This document shows positions 4,547 to 62,898 of a stretch of 64,000 nucleotides of DNA, piece after piece (the first letter of the stretch is position 1; the number at the start of each line of letters is the position of its first letter). The notes under the pieces are model-generated. The model was not told where the DNA came from. It did no database searches and saw only the letters and a program-made list of their open reading frames with translations. The translations under genes were made by a program, and so were the position numbers. Source of the stretch: Blastocystis sp. Blastoise (Eukaryota > Protista > Bigyra: Opalinata); contig JBBPEB010000005.1 of the NCBI GenBank assembly GCA_039096225.1, forward strand, positions 496,001-560,000, given 5' to 3'.

Positions 4547-6571
4547 GGAAAAGTGTTCTTGATCAACGATTTAGCATTTTAAAAAATAATTATGATATGT
4601 ATATTCATAGTTGATACTATTTTTATTATATTGCTATTATTACCCTATGCCATTTATTCTTTTATATAATACTTATTTATAGAATTAAGCGACCTGAGCA
4701 CATAATGACGCAACAAAAGTAATATTTTAAAGTTATATTATTAAATATATATCTTTCAAAATATTATCATAATATATAGGTATACAACAGCTAATATAAA
4801 ATTGTACAAATTTGGTATCAGAATTCTTGAAATGAATAATATTTGCTATGATCTTCAAACTAAAAAATTTGATATTTTTATAAATCGAGGTGATTCCACG
4901 AAAACAACAAACACTATAAACAGATGTATGTGCATAGCCCATAAATAATGTTCTATTTAAAATATATTTTCTTTTACTAAATTTCAATTGTGATCGTCAT
5001 TTAGTATTTTATCTGATATTTATATAGTTCATGATTTTATAACAACAAATAAGTTATATAAGACAATAGAGAATGAGATAATATATAATAAAACAAAAAA
5101 TATATGGATAATTCATGCAGCTTATGATTATCAAATAGCTCATTTTCAAGAAGCAGCTAATAATATGATTACCATAGCTAATCATCCTGAATTGTTCCCT
5201 AAAGTATATATAAGTAGTTAATTTATAGTATTTTATATTTATTAGTATAATTATTATATTATAATTATATTTATTATTAATGTTATTATTATATATATAA
5301 TAATTTTAATAATAATAATTTTTCTTATTTTGTAAATATAAATATAGGTAGATATGGTTTTATGGCCTACAAGAACTAATAAGGTATATTCTTGGATTCA
5401 AGAATATACGAATCTAATTCATGAATTGTATCCTTCAACTGTACCGTTTTATAGGAATAATGATATATATCGTATTTTTGGAAACCGTTTTTGTTTAGAA
5501 CATGTCGTATATATAAGTTATTTAATTAATATATATATATATTGTTATTTAATTAATATATATATATATATTGTTATTCAATTAATATATATATATATTG
5601 TTATTCAATTAATAAATATATATATATTGTTATTCAATTAATATATATATATATATATATATTGTTATTCAATTAATATATATATAATACTTCTAATTTA
5701 TATAGGATGTTGTACATAGAATTATGAATCCATTATTTGGTAATATTTTTGCAGATCCAATTGAAGCTTATTATGTTCGTGTATTAGCTTATAAATATAT
5801 AGGATATGATATTGCTTCTAAAAAATATACTGTTCCTTATGTAACAATAGTAAATAGAACTCCACGAACCAATCTATATAATCGTCAAATACGTAATATT
5901 GATGAAATTATGAGAGAATTCAATTCTAGTTTTTCTGGTTTAGTATATACTTTATATTTAATTTTCATTATTATAAAAATTATTATTGATATTTAGAGAA
6001 AGAGAAATAATAATTAGTTTTATTTTTGACTTTAGAATTATAAATATAGCTATTTAAGACTTTTTAAAAAATCATATATAATATTTCATCATTCATTTCA
6101 ATTATATATATATATAATATGTTTTATATATAGTTCAATTGTCGAAGTGAGCTTATTATTATGGATTTCTTAAAACTTCAAGAAGTAGTATCAATTATGG
6201 TGAAAACAGATATATTAGTAGGAGCAGTAGGTTCTGGACTAATAAATTCATTATTTATGCTTCCTTTTTCTGTTGTTATTATGTTTTTCCCTACTACTTC
6301 TCAAGATCATTATTTCTATAATCTTTCTTATTGTACAGATATCTATATACTTCCTTCTTATAATGCTTCTTTAAATCATTATCCTTCACCTAAATTCGAT
6401 AATTGTAATAAAACTATTAATAAATATGGAGTAATACTCAATAATTATACTTGTAATCATTTTGCTTATATGGATGATGTTTATATATCACCTAATATAT
6501 TATATCATCTATTATATATAGCAAATTTATATCTTAAACAAAAGAAATATTTTATACAATATGAATTTTAA
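4130..6571 (+). CDS. Glycosyltransferase family 61 (DUF563; EOGT/POMGNT2/xylosyltransferase-like), type II membrane protein, copy 1, multi-exon
   Basis: N-terminal signal anchor MNGLSIYNIISIIVLIVVITW; YDYQIAHFQE; VTIVNRTPRTNLYNRQIRNIDEIM; C-terminal LQEVVSIMVKTDILVGAVGSGLINSLFMLPFSVVIMFFP matches the GT61 'Q..D.l.g.HGAGL.N.lFm' pattern. Confidence 0.72.
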
Positions 6572-11863: not shown

Positions 11864-14800
11864 CGTATATATATCTATTTATTAGTATTAATTTATATTT
11901 TTTCTTCTTTATATATAATTAATATCCTTAATTTAGTTCTGCAAAAGTACGGTGTCTCACACACTTTCACCTTTATTGACTTTGTTATTAACTTTTATAA
12001 AATAAAAATAACATCATAAAATCCAGAACACAATTCTGAAAATGACTGTTAAAGAAATTTTTCAAAAACTCTAAATTTCTGGCTAAAAAACGGAAAAAAC
12101 CATTTTCGCACAAAATTTTAACCAAATCTATTGGATTATTTTTATTTTATCCAATATTTTTCATTTTTATAAAAACACTTATTTTTCGTTTTTCATTTTT
12201 TATTGTTTTCTTATTTTTCCTATATCACTTCACATACTCTATATTTATTTTTATAAAATTGACTTTTATTGACGGGTTAGTCTTATAAATAGTTTTGACG
12301 GGTGAATTTGTTTATATTTACAACTTGACAACATATCAATACACACATCACTAACTATAAACTCTAAAATGGTTTCAGTTGTTATGATACTGACCTCAAC
12401 TACTCTGAAACCACAATAATTCCTTTAAATAACAACAAAAGTCAAACTGATATCCGACACATTCCTTCTTTATAAACTTATTTGAGCTTTAATGTATTTA
12501 TTTAACTCTGTATCCGTCATAAATATGTTTTATATTTTAATAATATGTTTTAATAAGAAAATATTTGATAATAGAAATTTTGATGTTTTGATAGTATAGT
12601 TTGTTATTCGTCTTTCTCCTTGAGTTTTGGGTATTTTTTAAAAATAAAAGTATAATTATAATTAAGATAAGCTATTGCAGATACATATTTTTTATTTTAT
12701 CTAAATATTTAATATTGACTGAGAAACATTCATTTATATGAAAAACATAAAAATGAAAATTTTCAAAAAAGGGTATAGTTTGTTATTGTGATTTCTCAAT
12801 CAATTCTTAATAAAATAAAAAAGTTAGAACATATTTAGAAACTAGACATGTCATAGCAGATACATATTTTTCATTTTTTTAATTAATTGAAAACTCAGGT
12901 GACAAGAGTCAATAGTTGAACTCAATAAAAAATGACTTTCAAAAAATTTTCTTAAAAAGTTTTCATTTGTTTTTTGTTTATATTTTCATCATTAACAATT
13001 TTATTTGACATTTGACTTTATATTTAAAAACTACATACCAAAATAAACATATTTTACAATTTTATTTTGTTTTTAAAAGACTTTGACAACAGATCACCAG
13101 ACAATGTTAACTCAATAAACTCTTAAAACGTTTTAATACGTGTTCAGAACCACTCATAGACACTGTACGTGACTTATTTGAAAAAGTTAAGACAACATGT
13201 TGAACTGATACTGACAATGTTTGTCTTAAAAAGTTAGTTATGAGTCTTTATGAGTTGTATATGTCATAAATAAGCTTAAAATAAATAAATTTGTTTTTAA
13301 TTGTCTTTAATTAGTGAAATAAGTCGTTTAAAAAGTAGAAAGCATTTTGGATACTATAGTTTATTTTGACAATTTCTCCATCAATATTAATTTTTAAAAA
13401 ATAAATAAAACTTATTTATAAACTAGACAAACTATAGTTTATAAATTTATAAAAATATTATCAAAATATAAAATAACTTTTGAGATAAAAAATTATATAT
13501 GCAAAACATAAAAAAATTAATTTTTGAAAAAAGGGTATACTTTATAACATTAATTTCTCAGTCAATATTTAATTATTTTATATAATTTTAACAAATAAAT
13601 ATAGAGAATAACACATATTAATAATATAAATTTTAATATTTGAAATTAATAAAAAAATGAGTTCAGTAGAGTCAATAGTATAACATGTTAAAAAACTGAA
13701 AATTGAAAAATCATTTTTCTAAAAATTTTCTGAAAGTTGACAAATCAAATTCATATTTGACAAATAATTTTTATATATTTGTAAACTAGACCTTATATGT
13801 ATTGCATTTCTCAAAAAATTAGTCAAAAATAAGTTAGACGAGTGTATGAGTATATGCACATGTTGACTCATAATTTTGAAAAAAGTAGTTAAATATGTCC
13901 TAAACCACATATCAAAGCAATTCTATAAATATTATCACTTTATAATGAGTTTAAAGGGTAAAATAATTTTGAATTGTCTGTTTGACTGTCTTAAGTGAAG
14001 AGATTCAATACACTTTTTATAAAAATGAGTATTAGAGTGTTTAATGTTTATAATAATAAAAGAATTGTTTGAAATAAAGGTGGTTGTGTGTTTGACCAAA
14101 ATGTTAAAATGAGTCTATTTTTCTAAAATGGTTACAATAAGTATATATTGAGTGTTTTTAGAGTGTTTCATATTAAAATCTACAATAAATAAACATTTTA
14201 AGTTGTTCAAAAAATTATTTTTTTAGAATTACAATAGTTAAGTTAAGAGATTCAAGCTAATTTTTATAAAAATAATAAATAGACCTATTATAGAATATAA
14301 AATATTAAAAATTAGTTTAATTAAATGTGGTTGACTGTTTGATAGGAATGTTAAAATGGGTAAAAAGATTTCAATTGTTTCTAAAACCGTATAATATGTT
14401 TATTCTTTACTAAATACAAAATTATTATAGTTTAAAGAATGTTTTTTGTCTTTCAAAAGAACTCATTTTTTGTAATTGTGACTTTAAACAAAAGAGATTC
14501 AAGTTATTTTTTATAAATAAATATAACAAATTAAATATATGCGTATATGAATATAAAATTCGTTTTAATAAAAGTGAATGTGTGTATTTCAAAATGTTAA
14601 AGTCTTTTAGAGTTTTTTAAAAATAACTTATTTGTTGTATAAACTATATTTTATGTACAATAGGTAAAGTTTCCAGAGTATTTAAATCTATTTAGTTATG
14701 AAATGGAATGTAATTTTTGGTTTATATTTTTGTTTTTAGTTTTTAGTTATGAAATGATTTTGATAACACTATAAAAATTGAATTAAACTTGAATTAATTA

Positions 14801-17265: not shown

Positions 17266-17684
17266 AATAAATAATAAATGATTAATAATAAATAATAATA
17301 AATAATAATAAATAAATAATAAATAATTAATAATAAATAAATAATTAACAATAAATAATAAACAATAAAAAATAAACAATATATAAAAATAATGAAGGAT
17401 ACTAAAAAACTAAACACACATATTTTCATGCAGCCGCGGTCCGGGGCCGTTAGGCACTGGACCTGCGGCGTGACCCTAGTATAGAATAATTCAAATAAAA
17501 CATAAATATTTAAAGGTAGGGTAAAAGTGATAATAATATGTTTTAAAAGAAAAAGTATTTTATAATCATATTGATATTATTTAAAATACTAACTATTTAT
17601 AAAACGATATGAATTGATAAAATACATAGAGAGTTATAAATGAAATAACAAAGAAAAGTGAATTAATATTGAAAACTATAAACT

Positions 17685-17785
17685 AAATAGAAATAGAAAT
17701 AGAAATAGAAATAGAAATAAAAATAGAAATAGAAATAGAAATAGAAATAGAAATAAAAATAGAAATAGAAATAGAAATAGAAATA
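17685..17785. repeat. (AAATAG)n microsatellite in Helitron B
   Basis: Hexamer repeat; a longer version lies at 51593-51778. Confidence 0.9.
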
Positions 17786-18589
17786 AGATCAAAAATAAAA
17801 CACAAGAGTTAATTAATTATCATTGATAAACAATAAATATATATAATCAATAATAAAAATGGCTAAAAAGAATATTAAAAAAAAAAGGAAATAATACTCA
17901 AAAACATATAGAATGTTAAGTAAGAATTATCAATATGTATGAATTAAATTATTTAAAATACTAAATTGAAAATTAAGATTAGAAGATAACAATTAAAAGC
18001 AATTGAAATAATATTTTATAAAATATGAAATAGTTTTAATCCTAAAAAAAAATAAAAACAGAAATGAATAACAAAAACATAAGAATAAATATTCATTTTT
18101 TAAAATTCAATGTAAGATATAACAATTGAGAGATAATAATTATCTAAACTCAAGCGTAGGCTGGCGTAGCCAGTCGTGAAACGCTTGTTTTATATTATTA
18201 TATATTATTATATATATTTTTATATTATTATATATAATTTTATATATTTTATATTATTATATATTATTATATATTATTATATATTATTATATATTACTAT
18301 ATATTACTATATATTATTATATATTATTATATATTACTATATATTACTATATATTATTACTAGGGTCACGCCGCAGGTCCGGGGCCTAACGGCACCGGAC
18401 CGCGGCTGCAATGAATAATAAGTGTTTGGTTTTTATACAATTTCTTTCCTTATTATCTATAATATATTATATATTATATATTATATATTATATATTATAT
18501 AATATGTATTATTTATTAAATATTATCTATTAGATGTTACTTATTATATATAATATATTATATATATTATACATTATTTTAATAAAACT

Positions 18590-18657
18590 TCTTATACTCT
18601 ATATGGAGAGTAACAATCATTTATTGATTGTTATCAGGTTCAATTCCTGATATAAGA
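18590..18657 (+). ncRNA. mascRNA-like tRNA-like structure (3'-proximal class)
   Basis: TCTTATA CTCT ATATGG AGAG TAACAATCA TTTAT TGATTGTTA TCAGG TTCAATT CCTGA TATAAGA; all four stems pair perfectly. Confidence 0.75.
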
Positions 18658-19949
18658 ATTAAATAGATTATTTAAATAATATCTGAAAAACTAAAAACAA
18701 AAAAAAATATATAAATTCTTGTTTGATTCATTATATTTGTTATTTATTTTTTTTTAAATATATTTTGTATTTATAAATAGTTTAGTTACTTTTTTAATCA
18801 TTATGGAATTTCTAAAGCTAATAAATCTCGAAATGGGTCACAATGTGAAGTATTGAAAAATATTTTTATTTTATTAAATTAATTTAAATAGATTAGAATA
18901 AAGTAGTTTAAACTATTTTTAACCATTTCATAAAACTAAAACAAATTTAACACAACAATATCAACATTTATTTTCACATTAACGACTTAAACACATAGTT
19001 TTAGAATTAATATTAATGAAATCAATCTAAATAGAATTTTTATACATAACAGTATCAACAATATCGCTTTTAGAGAGACTTTACCATTTCGATATCCACT
19101 GTATCAAAATCGTTTTAGACATAACTTTCACACAGTATAGATCTCATTGTATTATTTATTAATTATAGTTTAATGTCTTGAATCTCTGACCTCATGACGC
19201 TTTTTAATACATTTTGAAAAATTGACACACTTATAGTTAATTTAAAACTCTAATATTTAAACACTATACTCAACATAACTCTATCAATACATTAGTTACC
19301 ATTTTAACACTCTTTATAAACATTTTACATTTGGTCATACACTTTTTCAAGAGTATTTTTGTCACTTCTTTTAATATAATTTAGACTATAGTTCATAGTT
19401 TGATAAATAAAATGTTTTATATTGAATCTCGTCCGTTGAGTAACTTATTTCTACATTTAAAAAAATAAACCCCTTTAAACTTGTTTTTAAAAGTCAAAAT
19501 TTTCATAGTATAATAAAAACACAATTTTAAACAAAGAAGCTAACTCTTTAAAATTTCTAGACAACTCAAACACATTGTTAATTAACTTTTCAAAAATGAA
19601 ATTCTCTTAATTTTTAATATGTTGTAGAATTTAGCTTAGTGTATATTAAATCATTTTTTAGAATTTCGAATCTCTTAGTTTAAGAACCCCTTTTTACAAT
19701 TTTTTAAATTTTACAACCTTAAACTTACTTTTATGACTTTATATTTACACAATAATATATATATGCAAGATGAATTAGTGGAGAAAAACAAAACTTAAAT
19801 ATCTCAATCATTGACAGTATTAAATCAGTTATACTATATAAAGTTAAAAGTGGACAATAGATATTTTAAATTAAATTGAATCCAAACATTTAAAAACTTG
19901 ACACTATTTAATATATTAAGTAATTGAAGAATTATCTTAATAGTCGACA

Positions 19950-21516
19950 CAATTTAAATAAAAAAAAAAAAAAAGAAAAAGAACAAAACAAAAATAGAAC
20001 AAAAGAAAACATTTAAATATAGAATAGCTAAAACGATAACAACAGCATAAATAAATAAATAATATAAAGAAAGCAGATAATAGAAAGCTATTAAATGTGA
20101 AAAATAATAATAATAATAAGCAAAAGAAAAAGAAAAAGAACTAAAAAAAAAAAATCTAAACATAACCATAACACTAAGAGAACCTATATAGATAAAAGAT
20201 ATATATATATATAATAAGAGATAGTATAATAAATATATCTAACATATATATATATACCTTCAGTATTAAAAACTATTCACACCATCACTATATAGATATA
20301 AGATATAGATATATTAAAAGAAATATTATAAATATTTGTTATATATATATATATATATATATACCTTTAGATACATTTTTATTATTAAAATGAAAGCTAA
20401 CATTAGGGTGATAAGATCCCCTATTAGAAAAGACACCTATATATAATATAATAAATGATAAAATATATATAAACAATAAATATATATATATACCTTCTAA
20501 AGAAGGAACAGAGGAAACACCATGATATCTTAACTGACTTGAAGAACCTATATATAATGAAAAGATAATTAATAAATCAAAAAAAAAAGAAAGGAAGAAA
20601 TAAGAATATACCTGTATCATTATTACCATTAATCCAAGACTCCATAAGAAAAGAACGACCTATATAAGATAAAAATAATAATAAACTAAATTAAATTTAA
20701 AAAGTAGACATACCTTCATCATTAATACGTTCAGCAACTACAACCACAACAGTAGAATAACCTATAAAGAAACAGTAATAGACAAATAATAAATAAAAAA
20801 AAATAATAATAAATGAATGACAATATATATATACCTTTAATATCATATGAGCAGTCTACCTGATCACCAACAACATCCATAGCAACATTTACATCAATAA
20901 AACAAACCTATATATATAAAAGTAAAAAAAGAAAAATAAATGAATGACAACATACCTTCAACACCACACAGACATCTATTATCAACATCACTGTTAACAT
21001 GTACAACAACTGAAGAACCTATATATATAGAAATAATAAAAAAATAATAATAAAATATAAAAAAAAAAAAATAAATGATTGGTAACATACCATCTATAAA
21101 GCAAGAAGAACCTACATCAACACCGATATCACTATTGGAATCACTTACAATAACAGAAGAACCTATATATAAAGAAAAGTTAAAAAAATAAAAACAAATC
21201 ATTGACAACATACCTTCACAGTTAGCATAACAGGCAACACCACCACCTCTGTATGATACAAATAACATAGAACAACCTAAAATAATATAATAAATAATTA
21301 ATAAAAAAAGAAATGGAAAATATATACCTTTAAGACCATCAGAGCAAGTACCACCAAGACTAAGAACATACATAACTGGATTCTATTGAGTAGAAGAACC
21401 TAAATATGAATACTAATAACAAATAGATACAATATACCTGATTTTCTTTGAAATATAAATTATTTTTTATTTCCAGACCTCCACCTTGAAGCAATTTTGT
21501 TGTTCTTAGACATCAT
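19950..21516 (-). pseudogene. Helitron-borne micro-exon gene remnant (basic first exon, then repeated Gly-Ser-Ser-starting short exons)
   Basis: MMSKNNKIASRWRSGNKK*FIFQRKS followed by a phase-1 GT intron, then more than 10 short exons, many starting GTTCTTC and ending AAG|gt. In-frame stops in exons 1 and 2. The lower boundary is approximate. Confidence 0.55.
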
Positions 21517-21599
21517 AATTAATAATTTAATATATAAATGAGTATTAGATTATGTATTTAACAATCCTATTTCATTTGAATTAATAAATATAATAGGGT

Positions 21600-21730
21600 C
21601 TATTTTTAAAATATGCTTCTTAAAACATAATAGAAATCAAAAATAGCCTTAATTTTTCATTGATTTTATTACAAAAGTAATAATTGGGTCATTCTGGTTT
21701 AAAATCATTTTGGGTACCCAAAAAACATAG
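21600..21730. promoter_or_regulatory. Putative bidirectional promoter of Helitron A
   Basis: TTTTGGGTAC...CCCAATT motif pair conserved with 60995-61030; lies between the divergent sense ATG and the antisense spliced unit in both elements. Confidence 0.4.
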
Positions 21731-21871
21731 TTCTTTACTCTTTTTTAAATATTTTATTGTATTGATTGACTTAGTGTGTTTTATTTATTTATTTAAAGTT
21801 ATTTAACTTAGTATTATATTTATCTATTTATATACTAATTTATTTATTTAAAATAATACACTTCTTTATAG

Positions 21872-22288
21872 GATTCTCTTGTATTTGCCTTGGTTGTCAT
21901 GGTTAGTGGTTCTTGAAGTGGTCCTGGTTAAATGAAATGGTTTATTTAGTGTCAGGTATATAAATATATATATTTTTTATAATATTTCATTTTTAATTCA
22001 TTTGTTTCTTTAATTGTTTCTTTTTTTATTATCTTTTTGGTTTATATTTTCTTTATATATAATTAATCAATAGATTATTAGTTATTTTTATTCTATAGGG
22101 AAGAAAATGTAACTGATGTGTGTGTTATACTCTTCGTTTTTTCATGTCTTTCTTTTAAATCTGTGGTTTCAGGTTGATTTATATGTATATATTTATATTT
22201 TATTTATTATTTTTGTTATTTATTGTTTCTTTATTTATTTATATTTTATTTATTAAATTTATTTTATTTATTTATTTATTTATTTATT

Positions 22289-22331
<43 letters not shown>

Positions 22332-22910
22332 TTATATTTATTATATTTATATGTTTATTTATTTATTATTATTTATTTATTTTATATGTTTATTTATTTA
22401 TTTTTAATATTTATTTATGTATTTATTAATTATTTATATTATCTTTTTTATATGTTTTCTATTTTATATAGGTTTAAAATCTTCTTATTCTTTTTTTTCT
22501 TCTTTCTTCTTCCTTCTTACTTCTTTCTCATTCTTTCTACTTCCTATTTCCTTCTTCATTCCTTCTTCCTTCTTCCTATTTCCTTCTCCATTCATGCTTC
22601 CTTCTTCCTATTTCATTCTTCATTCATGCTTCCTACTTCCTACTTCCTACTTCCTTCTTCCTTCTTCCTCATCTTTGATTCTTCTTACTTACTTCTTCTT
22701 CATTCTGGATTCTTCCTTCTTCCTCATCCTTCCTTATTCTTACTTCTTCTTACTTCCTTCTTTCTCATCCTTCTTCCTCATCCTTCCTTATTCTTACTTC
22801 TTCTTCCTAATCCTTCCTACTTCCTTCTTCCTCATCCTTCCACTTCATTTCCTTCTTATTATATATATATAAATATATATATTTGATTATTATTATTATT
22901 TATAAACTCC
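21872..22910 (+). ncRNA. Putative spliced non-coding transcript, antisense to the Helitron, ending at a tRNA-like element
   Basis: AG/GT-bounded exons 21872-21955, 22099-22172 and 22472 onward (CT-rich tract). Stops occur in all three frames of the first exon. A homologous layout lies at ~60790-59902. Confidence 0.45.
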
Positions 22911-22976
22911 TTTTATGCTCTAGAAGGAGAGAAACAATCATATAGATTGTTTTCAGGTTCAATTCCTGACATAAAG
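22911..22976 (+). ncRNA. mascRNA-like tRNA-like structure (5'-proximal class)
   Basis: TTTTATG CTCT AGAAGG AGAG AAACAATC ATATA GATTGTTT TCAGG TTCAATT CCTGA CATAAAG. Confidence 0.75.
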
Positions 22977-23009
22977 TGTTATTTTTTTATTTTTTAATAT
23001 TTTATTCAC

Positions 23010-23064
<55 letters not shown>

Positions 23065-25069
23065 TCTTTTTTAAATTTATTTTAAACCATTTTAATTTAT
23101 ACTTTTCAATTTTGATCTTAAACATATATATCTAACTTTTTATAGCTTTTTTAGACTTCCTCTTCTTAACAACAGTCACAATGAGAACAAATCTATTTAT
23201 ACTCAAACAAATAAATTATCTCTAAACTGTTTGAATCAATCAATATAGACGTGTCTGACATAATTTATCAATTTAAACTCAATTTTAATAATTAAAAGTA
23301 AACAAACCAAACACACATGTCGACTTTAAAACGTTAAACTCAGTATTAATAATTTATTTTTATAGAGTAAACACGAAACATTGATTTATACAAAAAGGAA
23401 TGGAAACAATCAACTCTTGATACAACTTTACCATTTGGCAAAACACTCATCCACAATATTTTCTAAAGTACTTTTCATAAAGTGTTTATATACACATGCT
23501 ATCTATAAAATGAAAGTCAACTTCTTGAATCTCTTTGTTTAAGACACTACTTAATACATTTTGACAAATAGACAACCTTTAACTTATTATATAAAGCTAA
23601 TATTTTAAAATTAAACTTGATTTAGACCTATGAACACATTAGTCAACACTTTAGACTTTTTAAAGACACTTTACCATTTGGTCATACACTTTGATCAAAA
23701 TATTTTTGTCCCTCCTTTTAATATAATATAGGTTATACACTCTAGTTTAATGACTAAAAGCTCTTATTTTGAATCTCGTCCTCTAAGTCACTCATTTTTA
23801 CATTTTCTAAAAATTAAGACCCTTAGAGTTGATTTTTTAAGTTAATTTTTCTACAGTGTTCCAAAAACACGATTTTGCTCAAACTGAAGTAAAAATAAAT
23901 TTTAAATAATAGTCACAACACCTCACACATCCATTCTTTAAAAATTATTTTAACTGTACTTTTGATATGTTGTAGAGCTACTATAGCTGTACACTAATTA
24001 ATATCTCTAAATTTTTTATTCATAGTTTAAGACTATGTTTTACACATTCTTTTAAATTTGACAACCTTAAACTATTTATTTAAAGCTCTTATTCATAAAA
24101 TAGACTTGATACATGATTCTAAACACATATATAAACCCTTTTACTTTTTAAGACACATTTTGTCATTTGGTCATACACTTTGACCTTCATAATTTTGACT
24201 CTCCTTTTAATATAGAATAGAGTTATAAGTCTAGTTTACTAAATAAAAGTCATAATATTGAATCTCTCACTCTAAGACCACTTAATTCACATTTTTCAAA
24301 ATTGTCACTTTTAAACTCGTTATTTTAAAACTCTGTTTTAACTATAGTAGTTTGATGACCTATTGATTACTATGCTACAATATTAGTCCATTATAAGAAG
24401 ATCGAAGAAAATATCGATCACTCAAAAATCGTCCTCAGGAGCTCAAAATCGCTACACCTAGGTTTTTGGACCTCCTGAATCAGAATATCATGTCAAATTG
24501 AGAATCTAAATTTGACCGTTAAGGCCTCACGTGTTCAATATGAAAAAGTATTAAAAAATAGATAAATATAAAGAATAAACACGGATAACGTATATTGTGG
24601 GATTGAGAAAAAATCAAGTTTACCCCATGTTTATTTTTCAATTGTCTGGTCAACAATTTTTATCGGGGTCACCCCAAAGAGCCAATCAAAAACGACTCAA
24701 AAATCATGTTTTCTGTTTTTTTATTAATAACTTTTTAATTATAAACAATATCGCTTATCCAAATATACGGTGCAAAACTACACGTTATATCGTATTGAAC
24801 TGTGTTTCAACCAAAAGTTAACTCCCCGTAAGTTTAGAGGAGTTGCGGCGACAAACTATAGTATATAGTAGCCAATCAAATGGTTTTTCCAAAAACTGAC
24901 CAATGGGAATTTTTTTGCCTATTTGCTTTATAATAGTAATGATATATTATTATATATTACTATATATTACTATATATTATTATATATTATATATATTATT
25001 ATATATTATTATATATTATTAAATTAATAAATGTAATAACTATTATTATTAACATAATATTTATAAAGA

Positions 25070-47283: not shown

Positions 47284-50200
47284 GAGAGAAAAATTCCAGA
47301 CAATAGTTTGACTATTTTTCAACTCCAGACAACAAAACTATAGGGAATCTAAATTATCGCGGAAATAATGACATTTTGGCAGAACATTTAAATTGAGTCT
47401 AAAGAAAAATCAAATATAGACAGGTTATTTGTTATATATTTAAATACAGGCTATATAAGTGTTCTATTCAGATATAATGATTAAAAAATACGAATCAATG
47501 TTTAAAGAACAAAATTTTTCTAATATTTATTCAACATTAGACCCCATTATTGTAGTATATGTCTTTAATATATGTTATTTAATTAATAAACACGTATAGG
47601 CATCTGATCATAGTGATAGACGAACAAATCCGTTAACTTCAACAACAGCCAGTGGATTGCAGTATGCAGATGGAAAGCTAAGAACAAAGGTAGATGATTC
47701 CAACAATTGTAATGGGTTCTACAGAGTGACTGATACTCCTAAATATATATTGTATAAAAATTTAATATTCGCTCAAATGAATGGCATTCCCAATGTGATA
47801 GACTCTTTGGATGAAGTTGAGATTTTTATTCGTAAGTATAGTCATGATATGGGCTACTCATTAAGAGTAATCAGAAGTTCAAGTATGAACATTATTTATG
47901 GATGCCCAATTAAGATGTGCAACTTCGTTTGTGAATATAGATATGAAAAAGGTTCGTTTAATTTAGTCAAATATCACATACATGATACAAACGTATATAT
48001 ATCTATTTATTAGTATTAATTTATATTTTTTCTTCTTTATATATAATTAATATCCTTAATTTAGTTCTGCAAAAGTACGGTGTCTCACACACTTTCACCT
48101 TTATTGACTTTGTTATTAACTTTTATAAAATAAAAATAACATCATAAAATCCAGAACACAATTCTGAAAATGACTGTTAAAGAAATTTTTCAAAAACTCT
48201 AAATTTCTGGCTAAAAAACGGAAAAAACCATTTTCGCACAAAATTTTAACCAAATCTATTGGATTATTTTTATTTTATCCAATATTTTTCATTTTTATAA
48301 AAACACTTATTTTTCGTTTTTCATTTTTTATTGTTTTCTTATTTTTCCTATATCACTTCACATACTCTATATTTATTTTTATAAAATTGACTTTTATTGA
48401 CGGGTTAGTCTTATAAATAGTTTTGACGGGTGAATTTGTTTATATTTACAACTTGACAACATATCAATACACACATCACTAACTATAAACTCTAAAATGG
48501 TTTCAGTTGTTATGATACTGACCTCAACTACTCTGAAACCACAATAATTCCTTTAAATAACAACAAAAGTCAAACTGATATCCGACACATTCCTTCTTTA
48601 TAAACTTATTTGAGCTTTAATGTATTTATTTAACTCTGTATCCGTCATAAATATGTTTTATATTTTAATAATATGTTTTAATAAGAAAATATTTGATAAT
48701 AGAAATTTTGATGTTTTGATAGTATAGTTTGTTATTCGTCTTTCTCCTTGAGTTTTGGGTATTTTTTAAAAATAAAAGTATAATTATAATTAAGATAAGC
48801 TATTGCAGATACATATTTTTTATTTTATCTAAATATTTAATATTGACTGAGAAACATTCATTTATATGAAAAACATAAAAATGAAAATTTTCAAAAAAGG
48901 GTATAGTTTGTTATTGTGATTTCTCAATCAATTCTTAATAAAATAAAAAAGTTAGAACATATTTAGAAACTAGACATGTCATAGCAGATACATATTTTTC
49001 ATTTTTTTAATTAATTGAAAACTCAGGTGACAAGAGTCAATAGTTGAACTCAATAAAAAATGACTTTCAAAAAATTTTCTTAAAAAGTTTTCATTTGTTT
49101 TTTGTTTATATTTTCATCATTAACAATTTTATTTGACATTTGACTTTATATTTAAAAACTACATACCAAAATAAACATATTTTACAATTTTATTTTGTTT
49201 TTAAAAGACTTTGACAACAGATCACCAGACAATGTTAACTCAATAAACTCTTAAAACGTTTTAATACGTGTTCAGAACCACTCATAGACACTGTACGTGA
49301 CTTATTTGAAAAAGTTAAGACAACATGTTGAACTGATACTGACAATGTTTGTCTTAAAAAGTAAGTTATGAGTCATTATGAGTTGTATATGTCATAAATA
49401 AGCTTAAAATAAATAAATTTGTTTTTAATTGTCTTTAATTAGTGAAATAAGTCGTTTAAAAAGAAGAAAGCATTTTTGATACTATAGTTTATTTTGACAA
49501 TTTTTCCATCAATATTAATTTTTAAAAAATAAATAAAACTTATTTATAAACTAGACAAACTATAGTTTATAAATTTATAAAAATATTATCAAAATATAAA
49601 ATAACTTTTGAGATAAAAAATTATATATGCAAAACATAAAAAAAATAATTTTTGAAAAAAGGGTATACTTTATAACATTAATTTCTCAGTCAATATTTAA
49701 TTATTTTAAATAATTTTAACAAATTAATATAGAGAATAATATATATTAACGATATAAATTTTAACATTTAAAATTAATTAAGAAATGAGTTCAGTAGAGT
49801 CAATAGTATAACATGTTAAAAAACTGAAAATTGAAAAATCATTTTTCTCAAAATTTTCTGAAAGTTGACAAATCAAATTCATATTTGACAATTAATTTTT
49901 TTATTTTTGAAAACTAGACTACATATGTATTACATTTCTCAAAAAAATGGTCAAAAGTGGAGTTGACGAGTGAATGAGTATATGCACATGTTGACTCATA
50001 ATTTTGAAAAAAGTAGTTAAATATGTCCTAAATCACATATCAAAGCAATTCTATAAATATTATCACTTTATAATGAGTTTAAAGGGTAAAATAATTTTGA
50101 ATTGTCTGTTTGACTGTCTTAAGTGAAGAGATTCAATACACTTTTTATAAAAATGAGTATTAGAGTGTTTAATGTTTATAATAATAAAAGAATTGTTTGA

Positions 50201-52184
50201 AATAAAGGTGGTTGTGTGTTTGACCAAAATGTTAAAATGAGTCTATTTTTCTAAAATGGTTACAATAAGTATATATTGAGTGTTTTTAGAGTGTTTCATA
50301 TTAAAATCTACAATAAATAAACATTTTAAGTTGTTCAAAAAATTATTTTTTTAGAATTACAATAGTTAAGTCAAGAGATTCAAGTCACTTTTTATAATAA
50401 TAATAAATAGACTTATTATAGAATATAAAATATTAAAAATTAGTTTAATTAAACATGGTTGACTGTTTGATAGGAGTGTTAAAATGGGTAAAAAGATTTT
50501 AATTGTTTCTAAAACTGTATAATACGTTTTTATGTTACTAAATACAAAATTATTATTGTTTAAAGAATGTTTTTTGTCTTTCAAAAGAACTCATTCTTTG
50601 TAATTGTGACTTTAAACAAAAGAGATTCAAGTTATTTTTTACAAATTAAAATAACAAATTCAATACATGTGTATATTAGCATAAAATTAGTTAAAATAAA
50701 AGTGAGTATATGTATTTAAAAACGTTCAGTCTTTTAGAGTTTTTTTATGATAACTTATTTGTTTTAGAAGCTATATTGTATGTATAATAGGTAAAGTTTC
50801 CAAAGTATTTAAATCTATTTAGTTATGAAATGAAATGTAATTTTTGTTTTATATTTTAGTTTTTATTTCTTATTTCTAGAATGATTTTGATAACACTATA
50901 AAAATTGAATTAAATTTGAATTAATTAATTTTAAATAATGAAAAGATAATTTCTCTATAAATATTCTCTTTTACTTAAAACGAATAGATTCTATTAATGA
51001 TAAATATTAAAATAAGACTCTAATTTTTTTGTTTATTATATAAAGTAATAAATATCTTTTAATTATTAAGAGTATTTTTGTATTAATAATTCAAACTAAA
51101 ATAAGTATAATAAAAGAAAAATTATAATATTTATCAAATAATATCAAGATATGATTACTATTTATATAATTAAACATTTATTAATTGAGAAAAGCTGTAT
51201 AATAAAATTTCTAAAATATTTATATAATAGTATATATAAAAGGAAAGGATAAAATATAAAAAAACAAATAGATATCAAAATTATAATATTTTAAAAAATA
51301 AAACAAAACAATATATGAAAAGAATAAAAAAGAATATATAATATTTTTTTAGACAAGAGAATAAGCTATTTCTCACAATAATAATTATATAGACTAATTC
51401 AAATAAAACATAAATATTTAAAGGTAGGGTATAAGTGATAATAATATGTTTTAAAAGAAAAAGTATTTTATAATCATATTGATATTATTTAAAATACTAA
51501 ATATTTATAAAACTAAATGAATTGATAAAATACATAGAAAGTTATAAATGAAATAACAAAGAAAAGTGAATTAATATTGAAAACTAAAAACTAAATAGAA
51601 ATAGAAATAGAAATAGAAATAGAAATAGAAATAGAAATAGAAATAGAAATAGAAATAGAAATAGAAATAGAAATAGAAATAGAAATAGAAATAGAAATAG
51701 AAATAGAAATAGAAATAGAAATAGAAATAGAAATAGAAATAGAAATAGAAATAGAAATAGAAATAGAAATAGAAATAAGATCAAAAATAAAACACAAGAG
51801 TTAATTAATTATCATTGATAAACAATAAATATATATAATCAATAATAAAAATGGCTAAAAAGAATATTAAAAAAAAAAAGGAAATAATACTCAAAAACAT
51901 ATAGAATGTTAAGTAAGAATTATCAATATGTATGAATTAAATTATTTAAAACACTAAATTGAAAATTAAGATTAGAAGATAACAATTAAAAGCAATTGAA
52001 ATAATATTTTATAAAATATGAAATAGTTTTAATCCTAAAAATAAATAAAAACAGAAATGAATAACAAAAACATAAGAATAAATATTCATTTTTAAAAATT
52101 CAATGTAAGATATAACAATTGAGAGATAATAATTATCTAAACTCAAGCGTAGGCTGGCGTAGCCAGTCGTGAAACGCTTGTATA

Positions 52185-52468: not shown

Positions 52469-52690
52469 TATAGTCAATTAATAGGAACAGATTTTTTGAT
52501 TTTATCAAATCCACCAATATGGCCACCATTATATGCTATTAGAAAAAGAGGACCAAGTAGAAAAAATAGATACAAAAAGATTTGTGAGAAGAAAAGAACT
52601 TTTTCTGCCAAAAAACGTTATTGTAGAAGGTCGTTTGAAGAAAAAGTGAATATTTTTGATTTTTCCAAATTTGATAAGTTTAGTAATTAA
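47284..52690 (+). mobile_element. Mutator-like element with internally deleted transposase (ATG 47477, DNA-binding exon to ~47991, C-terminal exon ~52473-52690); right end not seen
   Basis: MuDR-type C2H2 DNA-binding domain plus the basic PP..RKRGP.RK.R tail typical of MULE transposase C-termini; no DDE or SWIM exons in between. Confidence 0.62.
48053..52180 (+). mobile_element. Non-autonomous Helitron, family B (4128 bp, uninterrupted)
   Basis: A|TCCTTAATTTAG ... hairpin 52144-52180 ending CTTG|T. Confidence 0.72.
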
Positions 52691-55567
52691 TATATCCTTT
52701 AATTATTATTATATACTATATTAATATCCTTAATTTAGTTCTGCAAAAGTACGGTGTCTCACACATTTTCACCTTTATTGACTTCGTTATTAACTTTTAT
52801 AAAATAAAAATAATATCATAAAATCCGGAACACAATTCTAAAAATGACTGTTAAAATTATTTTTCGAAAACTCTAAATTTCTGGCTAAAAAACGCAAAAA
52901 ACCATTTTCGCACAAAATTTTAACCAAAATTATTGGATTATTTTTATTTTATCCAATATTATTCATTTTTATAAAAACACTTATTTTTCCATTTTCATTT
53001 TTTATTGTTTTCTTATTTTTCCTATATCACTTCACATACTCTATATTTATTTTTATAAAATTGACTTTTATTGACGGGTTGGCCTTATAAATAGTTTTGA
53101 CGGGTAGATTTGTTTATATTTACAACTTGACAACATATCAATACACACATTACTAACTTTAAACTCTAAAATGATTACATTCGTAATGCAAATGACTTTA
53201 ACTACTCTGAAATAGCAATAATTCCTTTAAATAACGACAAAAGACAAACTGATATCCAACACATTCCTTCTTAATAAACTTATTTGAGCTTTAATGTATT
53301 TAGTTAACTCTATATCCGTCATAAATATGTTTTATATTTTAATAATATGTTTTAAAAGAGAAATATTTGTTTATAAAAATTTTTCATCTTTGATACCCAA
53401 TTTTGTTATCATCAGATCTCAGTCAATATTCAACATATAATAATAATAAAAACATATGTGTAAACAAGACAACCTAAATATCATCCGTTTTTTATATTTT
53501 TGTTTAATATCCAATATTGACCGAGATATGTTAATTTATATTAAAAACATAAAAATGAAATTTTTCTAAAAATGGTATGTTTTGTTATCATCAGATCTCA
53601 GTCAATATTTTATAAAATAAAAAGGTTAAAGCTTATTTAGATATAAGACGACCTAAATATCATCCGTTTTTGTCATTTTTTCAAAATATTAAAAAATGAA
53701 CTCACAGGAGACAAGAGTTGAACTCAATAAAGAAAAGACTTTTGAAACTTTTCTCAAAAATGTTTCATTTGTTTTTTGTTTATATTTTCATCATTAACAA
53801 GCATATTTGACATTTGACTTTATGTTTAAAAACTACATACCAAAATAAACATATTTTATTATTTTCTTTTGTTTTTAAAAGACTTTGACAACAGATCACC
53901 AGACAATGTTAACTTAATAAACTCTTAAAACGTTTTAATTTGTGTTTAGAATCACTCATAGACACTGTATGTGACTCATTTACAAAAGTTAAGAACATGT
54001 TGAACTGATACTGACAATGTTTGTTCTAAAAAGTTAGTTATGAGTCATTATGAGTATAAAATGTTATAAATAAGCTTTAAATAAATTAATTAATTTTTAT
54101 AAGTCTTTAATTAGTGAAATAAATCGTTTAAAAAAAGAAAGCATTTTTGATACTATAGTTTATTTTGACAATTTCTCCATCAATATTAATTTTTAAAAAA
54201 TAAATAAAACTTATTTATAAACTAGACAACCTATAGTTTATATATTTATAAAATTAATATCTAAATATAAAATAACTTTTGAGAAAAAAAATTATATATG
54301 CAAAACATAAAAAAATTAATTTTTGAAAAAAGGGTATACTTTATAACATTAATTTCTCAGTCAATATTTAATTATTTTAAATAATTTTAACAAATTAATA
54401 CAGAGAATAACACATATTAATAATATAATTTTTAATATTTGAGATTAATAAAAAAATGAGTTCAGTAGAGTCAATAGTGTAACATGTTAAAAAACTGAAA
54501 ATTGAAAAATCTTTTTTCTCAAAATTTTCAGAAAGTTGACAAATCAAATTCATATTTGACAATTAATTTTTACATATTTGATAACTACACGTTATGTGTA
54601 TTGCATTTCTAAAAAAATCTGTCAAAAAAAAGTTTGAAGAGTGAATGAGTAAATGGAAATGTTGGCTCATGATTTTAAAAAACACTGTTATTCATGTCAT
54701 AAATATCATATTTAATACAAATCACTAATATTAGCTTTTTACGGTATGTTTATGTCGTAAAAAAGTAGTAATTTGTTTGTTTGACTGTCTTATGTCAAGA
54801 GATTCAAGACAATTTTTGTAGAAATGAATATAAAAGTATTAATTGAGTCTTAGTACGACTACAATTGTTGAAATAAACGTGATAAAAAAATAGACAAATT
54901 TTGAAATTGACCATATCTTTATAAATATATTCCAATCGCGTAAAAGTCATTGTATATATGATATAAAAACGTTTTTTTTACATATATAAATTTACTTGGG
55001 GTCATAAACACTTATCATTCTTATTGATTGTCAAGAATTTTTCAATTATTTATAACATGATTAACAAAAATTCGTTTGAAATTGTTAGTGTAGCTGTTTT
55101 GTTACAACATTACTATATAGAAATACACAAATTGAATAAACAAATCGTTAAGATGTCTTTATTACTTAAAAAAGTTATTAATTACTGTTAAATATTTCTT
55201 TTTATATTGTATTATTTAAATATCTTTATATAAGTTTATGTTCGTAAAGTAGAAGATTAATGAATTCTGACTTTTTATATTAAAATTTTTATTCATGTTT
55301 TCTTGATTCTAATAGAATACTCATTTTAATGTTTATATTCAAATAAATAAAAAAGAATGACACTCTTTTATCTGCCCATTCAGTCTGATCTTGAAAAATA
55401 TACTACTTTTAAGACCTAGAAATATTTATTCGAAATTATGACATTAGTGAGAAGTTCATTTCATAAATTATTGTTTAAAATAATATACATATAATTACCG
55501 AATTAAGAGAAAATCTTCAATATGAATAATATATAAATATCTAGATTCTGTAAAACAATATTTTGTA

Positions 55568-55635
55568 ATCTATATCAGGGTTTGAACCTGATAGTAATTC
55601 ATAATAAAATTACTGCTCCCATACTGAGCATAGAT
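55568..55635 (-). ncRNA. mascRNA-like tRNA-like structure in Helitron family B
   Basis: Reverse complement: ATCTATG CTC AGTATGG GAG CAGTAATTT TATTAT GAATTACTA TCAGG TTCAAAC CCTGA TATAGAT. Confidence 0.7.
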
Positions 55636-59833: not shown

Positions 59834-59901
59834 CCTTAAGTCAGGAATTGAACCTGATAATAGTTCAAAAAGAACTATTACTCTCCATTTAGAGCTTGGG
59901 G
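59834..59901 (-). ncRNA. mascRNA-like tRNA-like structure (5'-proximal class)
   Basis: Reverse complement: CCCCAAG CTCT AAATGG AGAG TAATAGTTC TTTTT GAACTATTA TCAGG TTCAATT CCTGA CTTAAGG (two C.A mismatches in the acceptor stem). Confidence 0.7.
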
Positions 59902-60790: not shown

Positions 60791-61194
60791 AATAAAATAA
60801 AAGAAAAAGAAAAAATACATAATTATTGGAAAAAATATATAAGAGCTAAATATTATATGAATATAATAATGGCGCTATATAAAAACACCAAATCCATTAA
60901 TAATAATATAATATGTATGGAGAAATATGAAAAATAAAAGAAGACAAAAGTATACTGACTCTTTTAGTAGAAATATTCTTTTTTAGTAAATTATTTTTGG
61001 GTACATAAATTTATATGAAGCCCAATTGTTTTAGTCTTATAAAAATTAATTAAAAATTTGTGATAAACTCTATAATAAATGCATTTTAGGGTACATATAT
61101 ATATTTCTTATCATTTTGTAAAAAGAACAATTAGTTTTATTTCTTTCATATTATACATAAATTATTTATTATATTTAATATTTTAAATACTAAA

Positions 61195-62840: not shown

Positions 62841-62898
<58 letters not shown>

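What the first reader, a model, noticed from the sequence alone, without database searches (positions are those of the whole stretch)
18360..24942. Full Helitron A architecture: gene cassette bracketed by two 'repeat array + antisense tRNA mimic' modules
Seen, in element orientation: 5' end, 244-bp array, mimic I, antisense spliced RNA, promoter, sense gene, second array, mimic II, hairpin-CTAG. All six mimics in the window are antisense to their element and lie just 3' of an array. Inference: mimic I could end the divergent promoter transcript, and mimic II could cut antisense read-through entering from the 3' flank, limiting dsRNA over the transposase gene (an anti-silencing device). An alternative is that the perfect B-box GGTTCAATTCC recruits TFIIIC as a boundary element.
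Basis: partly seen in the sequence, partly recalled or inferred. Interest (0 to 1): 0.82.

Follow-up and report, generated by a model that had tools for sequence, protein, structure and literature searches.

The report
Non-autonomous Helitron with two tRNA mimics
The 6.6-kb stretch is a real jumping gene of the rolling-circle (Helitron) kind, but it has lost its transposase; its second "repeat array plus tRNA look-alike" block is missing from all the complete, transposase-bearing relatives examined, so it most likely came from a fusion of two elements and is not a built-in shield around a gene.

Summary
The features and their order are real. Window 18360-24942 (minus strand) is a 6,583-bp canonical Helitron: 5'-TC, GC-rich hairpin plus CTAG, inserted A|T in phase in a 10-bp microsatellite. 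It has two 244-bp arrays, two antisense 66-68-nt tRNA mimics, an antisense exon-like unit and a micro-exon region.

It is not the "full" Helitron A. It has no RepHel, and its "sense gene" is a dead 5' remnant of the RepHel gene. One in-frame stop is shared by all seven two-module copies compared.

Six sequenced transposase-bearing relatives have no array or mimic at the 3' end, and five more show none by coordinates. RepHel stops 214-251 nt before the 3' hairpin.

The two-module layout belongs to one non-autonomous lineage, seen in 13 sequenced copies. It is most simply a fusion of an autonomous 5' part with the 3' part of a short element.

Mimic I ends a conserved divergent antisense unit. 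The mimics covary and are better conserved than their flanks. RNase P/Z processing is plausible but untested.

The scan found this 6.6-kb family (s1-734345) and the mimic before, on other DNA.

The parts
24343..24942 (-). 5' terminal module (F5), starting 5'-TCATTACTAT; the richest in GC of the element
   Evidence: 94-100% identical to the 5' ends of at least 41 scored (144 candidate) places in the genome. Always preceded by A.
23443..24342 (-). Array 1: about 3.7 diverged units of 244 nt (higher order 488/489)
   Evidence: Autocorrelation peaks at lag 244 and 489. Spacings of 244/488 in repeat families D12 and D17.
22983..23442 (-). Unique spacer preM1 between array 1 and mimic I
   Evidence: 85-100% identical in autonomous and two-module copies. 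Not homologous to preM2.
22911..22976 (+). tRNA mimic I (66 nt), antisense to the element
   Evidence: Covariance model R1, 82.4 bits, E 2.6e-21. Folds as a cloverleaf, z -3.4.
22472..22910 (+). Putative antisense exon 3: CT-rich tract, then an AT-rich tail that abuts mimic I
   Evidence: Acceptor TATATAG|GTTTAA found by pattern in 7 of 9 copies. The tract is present but differs in length between copies. Inferred; no RNA data.
22099..22184 (+). Putative antisense exon 2
   Evidence: Conserved block between acceptor TTCTATAG|G (9 of 9 copies) and donor GTATATAT (found by pattern in 6 of 9). The next intron, a (TTTA)n tract, varies from about 170 to over 380 nt between copies.
21872..21955 (+). 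Putative antisense exon 1
   Evidence: Conserved block bounded by TATAG|G (8 of 9 copies) and CAG|GTATAT (9 of 9).
21708..21723 (.). Perfect 16-nt palindrome TTTTGGGTACCCAAAA in the 350-nt zone between the two divergent units (candidate bidirectional promoter)
   Evidence: Present at the same place in 7 of 9 copies compared, autonomous ones included.
20153..21517 (-). Micro-exon region: dead 5' remnant of the RepHel gene
   Evidence: Homologous (67-70%) to the open, phase-1 micro-exon chain upstream of RepHel in autonomous copies. Here TAA in exon 1, TAG in exon 2 and TGA in exon 6.
19765..20152 (-). POST: start of the long RepHel intron. Last stretch homologous to autonomous copies.
   Evidence: Homology to the autonomous copy C14 ends at position 382 of 388.
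19043..19764 (-). Array 2: about 3 units of 244 nt, 71% like array 1
   Evidence: Autocorrelation peak at lag 244. BLAST to array 1 and to the arrays of short elements.
18663..19042 (-). Spacer preM2
   Evidence: 70-74% identical to the spacer of short non-autonomous elements. That spacer is 68-69% identical over about 235 nt to the spacer of the 57899 autonomous element, with which preM2 itself shares only a 20-nt exact word.
18590..18657 (+). tRNA mimic II (68 nt), antisense to the element
   Evidence: R1, 94.9 bits, E 5e-25. z -4.45. Only 2-8 differences from the mimics of short elements, while the adjacent 400 nt differ by 18-24%.
18451..18565 (.). (TATTATA)n microsatellite between mimic II and the 3' end; a site of nested insertion in another copy
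   Evidence: TRF. C1 copy 3 sits inside this tract of C1 copy 2.
18360..18462 (-). 3' terminal module with the GC-rich hairpin and CTAG (type a)
   Evidence: The motif GCGGCGTGACCCTAG makes up 82 of the first 100 listed places of 129.
18191..18359 (.). Target microsatellite (10-nt unit), 3' flank; its other half is at 24943-25021
   Evidence: TRF. The repeat phase is continuous across the insertion.

Best explanation
Window 18360-24942 is one copy of a multi-copy, recently active, non-autonomous Helitron of a very AT-rich protist. The assembly fits Blastocystis sp. Rus-B.

It is a fused element, and three points are shown.
- The first 5.17 kb equal the 5' part of the autonomous 'A' Helitron. 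That part holds the 5' terminus, a 244-bp array, tRNA mimic I, a divergent antisense exon-like unit, the promoter zone, the first micro-exons of the RepHel gene and the start of its long intron.
- The last 1.4 kb (array 2, spacer, mimic II, microsatellite, type-a hairpin-CTAG) equal the 3' part of the short non-autonomous elements. Those short elements consist of just 5' terminus, array, mimic and 3' end.
- The two modules are paralogs.

One point is inferred. The bracket arose by this fusion and then spread as a unit, so it is not the design of the autonomous element. RepHel-bearing copies have only the 5' module.

Mechanism (inferred, not shown). The mimic acts as RNA on the antisense strand, as a substrate for the tRNA-end enzymes RNase P and RNase Z. 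In autonomous and two-module copies, mimic I would cut off and so define the 3' end of the divergent antisense non-coding transcript before it runs out through the 5' end of the element. Mimic II would at most cut transcripts that enter from the 3' flank. It may simply be carried along.
For: Helitron identity:
- 5'-TC, hairpin plus CTAG, A|T insertion without duplication, in about 15 copies.
- RepHel ORFs of 1558-1571 aa with Helitron_like_N and PIF1 in relatives.

Non-autonomous status:
- No long ORF.
- The stop in micro-exon 2 is shared by all 7 two-module copies compared, but the codon is open in 3 autonomous copies.

A moving unit:
- Nine copies of the POST-to-array-2 junction at up to 3 mismatches, 7 of them exact, on 6 contigs.
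- Distinct flanks, and one copy nested inside another.
- Diverged subfamilies with the same layout and a junction within about 50 nt, where the POST stretch is detectable.

Autonomous copies lack module II:
- The 57899 element ends at C31:564117 with RepHel stopping 214 nt before the hairpin.
- The same holds in C14, C4, C7, C23 and C31:788900, with gaps of 239-251 nt.
- No model match at E<=1 in their 3' parts.
- Five more copies were checked by coordinates.

Fusion:
- Homology to the autonomous copy ends at element position about 5172.
- Homology to the short elements starts at 5178-5218.
- The short elements' spacer, which matches preM2, is also 68-69% like the spacer of the 57899-type autonomous element.

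Mimic under selection:
- 15 of 24 pairs show double changes among 12 distinct sequences, and 97.6% of cells are paired.
- 92-94% identity against 42-74% in the flanks.
- 2-8 differences in 68 nt against 18-24% next door, P 4e-5 to 0.01.

Antisense unit:
- Splice-site-like borders are conserved, one intron varies in length, and the unit ends at mimic I.
Against: - No RNA data were available. Splicing, the antisense transcript and cleavage at the mimic are all inferred.
- Both strands fold as a cloverleaf, and G-U (7) against A-C (4) hardly favours one strand. The strand call rests on the tRNA-like T-loop and the D-loop GG.
- Short elements have no internal promoter yet keep the mimic, which the 'ends the antisense transcript' role does not explain.
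- The direction of descent is not proven. An extinct autonomous ancestor with both modules, or short elements arising from two-module ones by array-array recombination, would give the same pattern today.
- Only part of the genome could be read.
Confidence: 0.6

Rival explanations
1. The two 'array + antisense mimic' modules are a designed bracket of the complete Helitron A. Mimic I ends the divergent transcript, and mimic II cuts antisense read-through from the 3' flank. Little double-stranded RNA then forms over the transposase gene, so the bracket works as an anti-silencing device.
For: - The layout is real and recurs in at least 13 sequenced copies.
- Both mimics are kept better than their flanks.
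- An Argonaute-type Piwi domain gene exists in the genome, so a small-RNA pathway is possible.
Against: - No transposase lies between the modules, and the enclosed gene remnant is dead.
- All 6 sequenced and 5 coordinate-checked RepHel-bearing copies lack module II. Those are the elements that would need the shield.
- The antisense unit diverges from the sense gene and does not overlap it, so mimic I would not limit double-stranded RNA over the gene.
- RNase III was not detected, which is inconclusive.
Confidence: 0.07
2. The mimic works as DNA or as a Pol III unit. Its perfect B-box recruits TFIIIC, as a boundary or open-chromatin element, or drives Pol III transcription of a small tRNA-like RNA, independently of any Pol II antisense transcript.
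For: - GGTTCAATTCC fits the B-box consensus. The 13-mer AGGTTCAATTCCT occurs 266 times in the genome and its reversed control 0 times.
- The T-arm is invariant in every Helitron copy.
- This role would explain why promoter-less short elements keep the mimic.
- T-runs follow several copies.
Against: - Compensatory changes in the acceptor, D and anticodon stems are not needed for TFIIIC binding, though they would fit a Pol III product.
- The D-arm does not match the A-box well (own reading).
- No TFIIIC B-block domain was found in a six-frame search, which is inconclusive.
- T-runs are uninformative at 20% GC.
Confidence: 0.15
3. The cloverleaf acts at the DNA level in rolling-circle transposition. 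It could be a folded structure in the displaced single strand that RepHel or a host factor binds. That would be why every non-autonomous derivative keeps 5' end, array, mimic and 3' end.
For: - The minimal short elements retain exactly these parts.
- Both strands can form the cloverleaf.
- The mimic is conserved in gene-less copies.
Against: - RepHel families of 1631-1644 aa in the same genome show no mimic within the regions read.
- Earlier notes of this scan place the same mimic in cut-and-paste transposons that make no single-stranded circle. I tested this only partly: one non-Helitron-type copy, L002:6988-7055, fits the model.
- The invariant T-loop and D-loop GG are the tRNA elbow, which is an RNA recognition feature (established tRNA knowledge).
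Confidence: 0.08
4. Module II has no function of its own. It is a passenger of the fusion event. Its conservation reflects the youth of the copies and constraint acting earlier, in the lineage where it was the 5' module.
For: - Many copies are 98-100% identical.
- Some copies carry damaged second or sole mimics: a D-stem deletion in L009, acceptor mismatches in L025, and module II interrupted in L026 with no B-box match.
- Autonomous copies do without it.
Against: Across two-module subfamilies whose module II flanks differ by 13-17%, mimic II differs by only a few, mostly paired, changes.
Confidence: 0.35

Closest known systems
Non-autonomous and chimeric Helitrons (bat Helibat/Helraiser work, PMC4778049, PMC4224331)
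   Same: 5'-TC and 3' hairpin plus CTRR termini, A|T insertion without duplication, loss of RepHel, and new combinations of 5' and 3' parts that then spread as units. [quoted passage not shown]
   Different: This family carries two paralogous 'array + tRNA mimic' modules and a retained bidirectional promoter zone with a dead gene stub. No host gene fragment was seen. I did not show how the fusion arose.
DINE-1 / Helentron-derived non-autonomous elements with internal tandem repeats (PMC4067079; oyster elements, PMC7492417)
   Same: Rolling-circle non-autonomous elements that carry internal tandem-repeat arrays and reach high copy number.
   Different: Those are Helentrons, with different termini. 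Here the termini are canonical Helitron ones. The array has a fixed 244-nt period at the 5' side and is also present in the autonomous partner.
mascRNA / menRNA modules at the 3' ends of MALAT1 and NEAT1
   Same: A non-decoding tRNA-like cloverleaf lies at the end of a non-coding Pol II unit, in the same orientation, where RNase P would make the 3' end. [quoted passage not shown]
   Different: I saw no upstream triple-helix or A-rich tract. The element sits in a DNA transposon of a protist. It has an 8-bp anticodon stem, no linker bases and no variable loop. There is no sequence relation, and cleavage is untested.
t-elements of plant mitochondria and the tRNA punctuation of mitochondrial transcripts (own knowledge, not checked here)
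   Same: tRNA-like folds used purely as RNase P/Z cutting signals at transcript ends.
   Different: Those are organellar and not carried by transposons.
tRNA-derived SINEs and extra-TFIIIC (B-box only) sites
   Same: A perfect B-box in a dispersed repeat.
   Different: The mimic is not itself the mobile unit. It has no A-box-like D-arm and no retroposon tail, and it shows structure-preserving covariation.

Membership tests
Helitron (canonical, Helitron1-type) | 5' terminus TC and 3' terminus CTRR | tested here: met
   TCATTACTAT... at 24942 and ...CCCTAG at 18360. The same termini occur in about 15 other copies.
Helitron (canonical, Helitron1-type) | GC-rich hairpin a few bases upstream of the 3' end | tested here: met
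   Hairpin at 18366-18410, 6 nt before CTAG. The two hairpin types in the genome differ by paired changes.
Helitron (canonical, Helitron1-type) | Insertion between A and T with no target-site duplication | tested here: met
   All complete copies are flanked by A...T. The microsatellite phase is continuous across this copy.
Helitron (canonical, Helitron1-type) | Encodes RepHel (Rep/HUH domain plus PIF1-like helicase) | tested here: not met
   No ORF over 166 aa in 18360-24942 and no RepHel block. This copy is therefore non-autonomous. Relatives with the same 5' end encode 1558-1571-aa ORFs with PF14214 and PF05970.
Helitron (canonical, Helitron1-type) | Many copies with the same ends at unrelated loci | tested here: met
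   The 5' end matches at least 41 scored places, the 3' motif 129 places, and this subfamily's junction 9 places.
   Absent in 6 sequenced copies. RepHel stops 214-251 nt from the hairpin, and there is no model match. Absent in 5 more copies by coordinates.
tRNA gene | Recognised by tRNA finders or the Rfam tRNA model | tested here: not met
   ARAGORN finds 0 genes. Rfam finds 0 matches at gathering scores.
tRNA gene | Four-armed cloverleaf supported by covariation | tested here: met
   15 of 24 pairs show double changes and 97.6% of cells are paired, after removing reverse-strand rows.
tRNA gene | Seven-base anticodon loop with conserved flanks, linker bases 8, 9 and 26, and a variable loop | tested here: not met
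   The loop is 5-7 nt and variable, the anticodon stem is 8 bp, and there are no linker or variable-loop bases.
mascRNA-type 3'-end module (MALAT1/NEAT1) | tRNA-like fold at the end of a non-coding Pol II transcript, same orientation | tested here: inconclusive
   The layout fits for mimic I, with exon-like blocks that end at the mimic. No RNA evidence. Mimic II has no upstream unit inside the element.
mascRNA-type 3'-end module (MALAT1/NEAT1) | Cleavage by RNase P and RNase Z, then CCA addition | not testable with these tools
   Needs RNA-seq, small-RNA data or enzyme assays.
mascRNA-type 3'-end module (MALAT1/NEAT1) | Upstream U-rich motifs plus an A-rich tract forming a protective triple helix | tested here: inconclusive
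   By eye, the 60 nt upstream are (TA)n and AT-rich, preceded by a CT-rich tract. No A-rich tract was seen. No formal search was made.
TFIIIC B-box site / Pol III gene | B-box consensus | tested here: met
   GGTTCAATTCC is invariant in the Helitron copies.
TFIIIC B-box site / Pol III gene | TFIIIC or Pol III occupancy; an A-box for transcription | not testable with these tools
   Occupancy needs ChIP. The D-arm fits the A-box poorly by eye. PF04182 was not found in the six-frame search, which is inconclusive.

The most novel reading that the evidence does not exclude
The tRNA mimic is a cis-acting device that this Helitron lineage carries to borrow the host's RNase P and RNase Z. By earlier notes of this scan, unrelated DNA transposons of the same protist carry it too. 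It would close off the element's own antisense non-coding transcript and cut read-in RNA. It would be selected even in gene-less copies because it keeps the copy transposable or unsilenced. That would be the first MALAT1-like 3'-end system outside vertebrates, and the first in a DNA transposon.
Probability: 0.3. Interest if true: 0.8.

Novelty: new variant of a known kind. Interest (0 to 1): 0.5.

Why it matters
This result corrects the map of the family. The complete Helitron A has one 5' module, not a bracket. The 6.6-kb two-module form is a fused, gene-less derivative.

That removes the main support for a 'shield around the transposase' model. It also sharpens what is still worth testing. 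A structurally selected, non-decoding tRNA look-alike sits exactly where a conserved divergent antisense unit of an apparently active DNA transposon ends, and every non-autonomous derivative sequenced here keeps it.

If RNase P/Z processing is shown, it would extend a mechanism described for MALAT1 and NEAT1 to a protist transposon. According to its methods, the genome paper for this strain (PMC12129017) used RNA-seq evidence for gene annotation, so the test is within reach. That paper does not mention Helitrons.

Tried and rejected
- Rfam at gathering scores and ARAGORN found nothing in the window.
- DUST-masked BLAST of this element against the 57899 element matched only the 5' 2.7 kb. That is what led me to look for its 3' end directly.
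- I tried to find the 5' end of the 1631-aa RepHel family, which shares the type-a 3' end, to see whether the non-autonomous elements are hybrids of two families. Comparing three copies did not give a clean boundary, so this is left open.
- My first automatic splicer for the micro-exons failed. A stop-free path search worked only for the first seven exons of the autonomous copy. I joined those exons only inside a local script, for a local tblastn against copies already held. The stops in exons 1 and 2 can also be read directly from the sequence.
- The six-frame searches for RNase III and the TFIIIC B-block domain found nothing. In an intron-rich genome this says little.
- Folding energies do not tell the strands apart.
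A full census and a larger covariation set were therefore not possible.
- Literature searches for Blastocystis plus Helitron, and for Helitron plus tRNA-like plus RNase P, found nothing relevant.
- I rejected 'two complete nested elements', because there is only one 5' terminus and one hairpin inside 18360-24942.
- I rejected 'segmental duplication only', because identical copies have different flanks and one sits inside another.

Full report
**Source.** The window is C31:496001-560000 of a 33.34-Mb, 34-contig assembly with about 21% GC. Size, contig number and GC fit Blastocystis sp. Rus-B from a Russian tortoise (Table 1 of PMC12129017). This is a circumstantial identification. That paper does not contain the word Helitron.

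**The observation.** On the minus strand the stretch starts TCATTACTAT at 24942. It ends with a GC-rich hairpin, six bases and CTAG at 18360. It is preceded by A and followed by T. The 10-nt microsatellite on both sides continues in phase, so nothing was duplicated.

- a 600-nt 5' module;
- a diverged array with autocorrelation peaks at 244 and 489 nt;
- a 460-nt spacer;
- mimic I at 22911-22976 on the plus strand;
- a CT-rich tract and exon-like blocks on the plus strand;
- a 350-nt zone holding a perfect 16-nt palindrome;
- a micro-exon region on the minus strand;
- a second 244-nt array;
- a 380-nt spacer;
- mimic II at 18590-18657 on the plus strand;
- a microsatellite;
- the hairpin.

**What it is not.** There is no ORF above 166 aa and no Rep or helicase.

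The genome holds about 50 RepHel ORFs. One belongs to the element that starts at window 57899. I fetched the rest of that element. It ends at C31:564117, with a 1558-aa ORF stopping 214 nt before a hairpin-CTAG. It has one mimic, at the 5' side, and no second array or mimic.

The same holds for five more sequenced RepHel-bearing copies: C14, C4, C7, C23 and C31:788900. Their stop-to-end distances are 239-251 nt. It also holds for five copies judged from the coordinates of RepHel, B-boxes and 3' ends.

RepHel families of 1631-1644 aa show no mimic at all in the regions read.

**What it is.** The two-module layout is nevertheless a real moving unit.
- The junction between the last autonomous-like stretch and array 2 occurs nine times at up to three mismatches, seven times exactly, on six contigs.
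- Copies on C1 have different flanks, and one sits inside the microsatellite of another.
- Diverged subfamilies share the same order of parts. Module II is 83-87% identical and the gene region 78-93% identical. The junction lies within about 50 nt wherever the POST stretch is still detectable.
- From the spacing of B-boxes (4.07-4.43 kb on one strand) I count about 21 such elements among the first 100 of 266 listed B-boxes. This is a lower bound.

In autonomous copies the micro-exons form an open chain with phase-1 introns. It has a basic N-terminus followed by units that begin Gly-Ser-Ser. In all seven two-module copies compared, exon 2 carries the same TAG where autonomous copies have CAG or ATG. 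Four of the seven also have a TAA in exon 1. The enclosed 'gene' is thus a remnant that was already dead in the common ancestor of the lineage.

**Origin of the second module.** Homology to the autonomous C14-type copy runs from element position 1 to about 5172. From 5178-5218 onward the element aligns with the short 2.2-3.2-kb non-autonomous elements. Those consist of a 5' module, an array, a spacer of the preM2 type, a mimic and a type-a 3' end.

The preM2-type spacer is not homologous to preM1. The short elements' version of it is 68-69% identical, over about 235 nt, to the spacer of the 57899-type autonomous element. Module II is therefore a paralog of a 5' module from another lineage.

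The simplest history is a fusion of an autonomous 5' part with the 3' part of a short element. A short element nested in the long RepHel intron is actually seen in the C23 copy. I cannot exclude an extinct two-module autonomous ancestor. I also cannot exclude that short elements arose from two-module ones by recombination between the arrays.

**The mimic.** A covariance model built from six copies finds 22 true matches in the DNA held, plus two reverse-strand echoes.

After removing the echoes, 12 distinct sequences give 15 of 24 pairs with changes on both sides and 97.6% pairing. The tool's own count and its slide control agree.

The T-arm and the D-loop GG are invariant, while the anticodon loop varies in sequence and length. 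The mimic is 92-94% identical across copies whose flanks are 42-74% identical. Mimic II differs from the mimics of short elements at 2-8 of 68 positions, while the next 400 nt differ by 18-24%.

Both strands fold equally well. The strand assignment therefore rests on the resemblance to tRNA.

**The antisense unit.** Nine copies were compared, including two autonomous ones. Three exon-like blocks on the mimic's strand keep their lengths. Their GT/AG-type borders were found by pattern in 6 to 9 of the 9 copies, depending on the border. The second intron, a (TTTA)n tract, ranges from about 170 to over 380 nt. The last block runs into mimic I. This fits a divergent non-coding transcript ended at the mimic, but no RNA was examined.

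The antisense unit does not overlap the sense gene. Mimic I therefore cannot be limiting double-stranded RNA over that gene.

**Rivals.** A TFIIIC or Pol III role fits the perfect B-box and the retention of the mimic in promoter-less short elements. It does not need the covariation seen in three other stems. A DNA-level role in transposition is possible but less likely. A passenger status for module II is quite possible.

**Comparison with what is known.** Chimeric and non-autonomous Helitrons, and rolling-circle elements carrying tandem arrays, are known (PMC4778049, PMC4224331, PMC4067079, PMC7492417). In the library searched I found no report of a tRNA-like module in a Helitron. MALAT1 and NEAT1 are described as the only lncRNAs matured by the tRNA machinery (PMC12941219).

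Earlier follow-ups of this scan had already called the 6.6-kb unit a non-autonomous Helitron (s1-734345). Several had also described the mimic (for example s1-718316 and s1-729086).

New here are four things:
- the direct comparison with the autonomous partner;
- the failure of the bracket model;
- the fusion reading;
- the shared stop codon.

Noticed in passing
L005/L006 (C4:1403283-1414356 inside a two-module copy); L003/L004 (C1:132705-139285 inside C1 copy 2); L020 flanks: Helitrons here often land inside other Helitrons. The (TTTA)n intron of the antisense unit, the (TATTATA)n tract next to the 3' end and the promoter zone each host a nested copy. Many copies crowd the first 100 kb of contigs C6, C7, C10, C11 and C20.
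   Followed up: partly
window 18360-18412 versus L002:430-518 (3' end of the 57899 element): There are two 3' hairpin types with the same frame but paired differences in the stem. All non-autonomous elements with the A-type 5' end that I read carry type a (GTGACCCTAG), which also ends the sequenced copy of the 1631-aa RepHel family. The A-type autonomous copies carry type b (GTTACCCTAG). Which transposase moves the non-autonomous elements is open.
   Followed up: partly
L018:3240-4400 (autonomous copy on C14): The RepHel gene seems to start with ten or more micro-exons of 45-76 nt separated by phase-1 introns. They encode a basic N-terminus and then repeated Gly-Ser-Ser... acidic units. A long intron of about 1.5 kb follows, holding a tandem repeat of about 115 nt, and then an Asn-rich exon.
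   Followed up: partly
window 21708-21723: A perfect 16-nt palindrome, TTTTGGGTACCCAAAA, lies in the zone between the divergent units. It is kept in 7 of 9 copies. It is a candidate factor site of the bidirectional promoter.
   Followed up: no
window 57899-64000 plus L001/L002, compared with L018/L019: Two autonomous copies are mosaics of each other: 75.6% identical over the 5' 2.5 kb, not alignable over the promoter and micro-exon part, and 96.7% identical over RepHel and the 3' end. Modules are evidently exchanged between lineages.
   Followed up: partly
window 55568-55635 (-): This sixth, divergent mimic (T-loop TTCAAAC, 50 bits) has no 244-nt array nearby and no Helitron A parts around it. 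Sequence about 1 kb to its left (52680-54881) recurs at 11882-14082 and 48010-50210 at about 86%.
   Followed up: partly
window 20894-21373 (-): A 159-aa ORF reads straight through four putative introns of the dead micro-exon region. In this copy those introns are 48-72 nt, all multiples of three and stop-free. In the autonomous C14 copy the intron lengths are mostly not multiples of three, so this is probably chance plus T-richness.
   Followed up: partly
window 17480-18190 and 51388-52100: The DNA between the short Helitron and this element recurs at 97% identity elsewhere in the window and ends next to a similar microsatellite. The target microsatellite may itself belong to another repeat family.
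   Followed up: no
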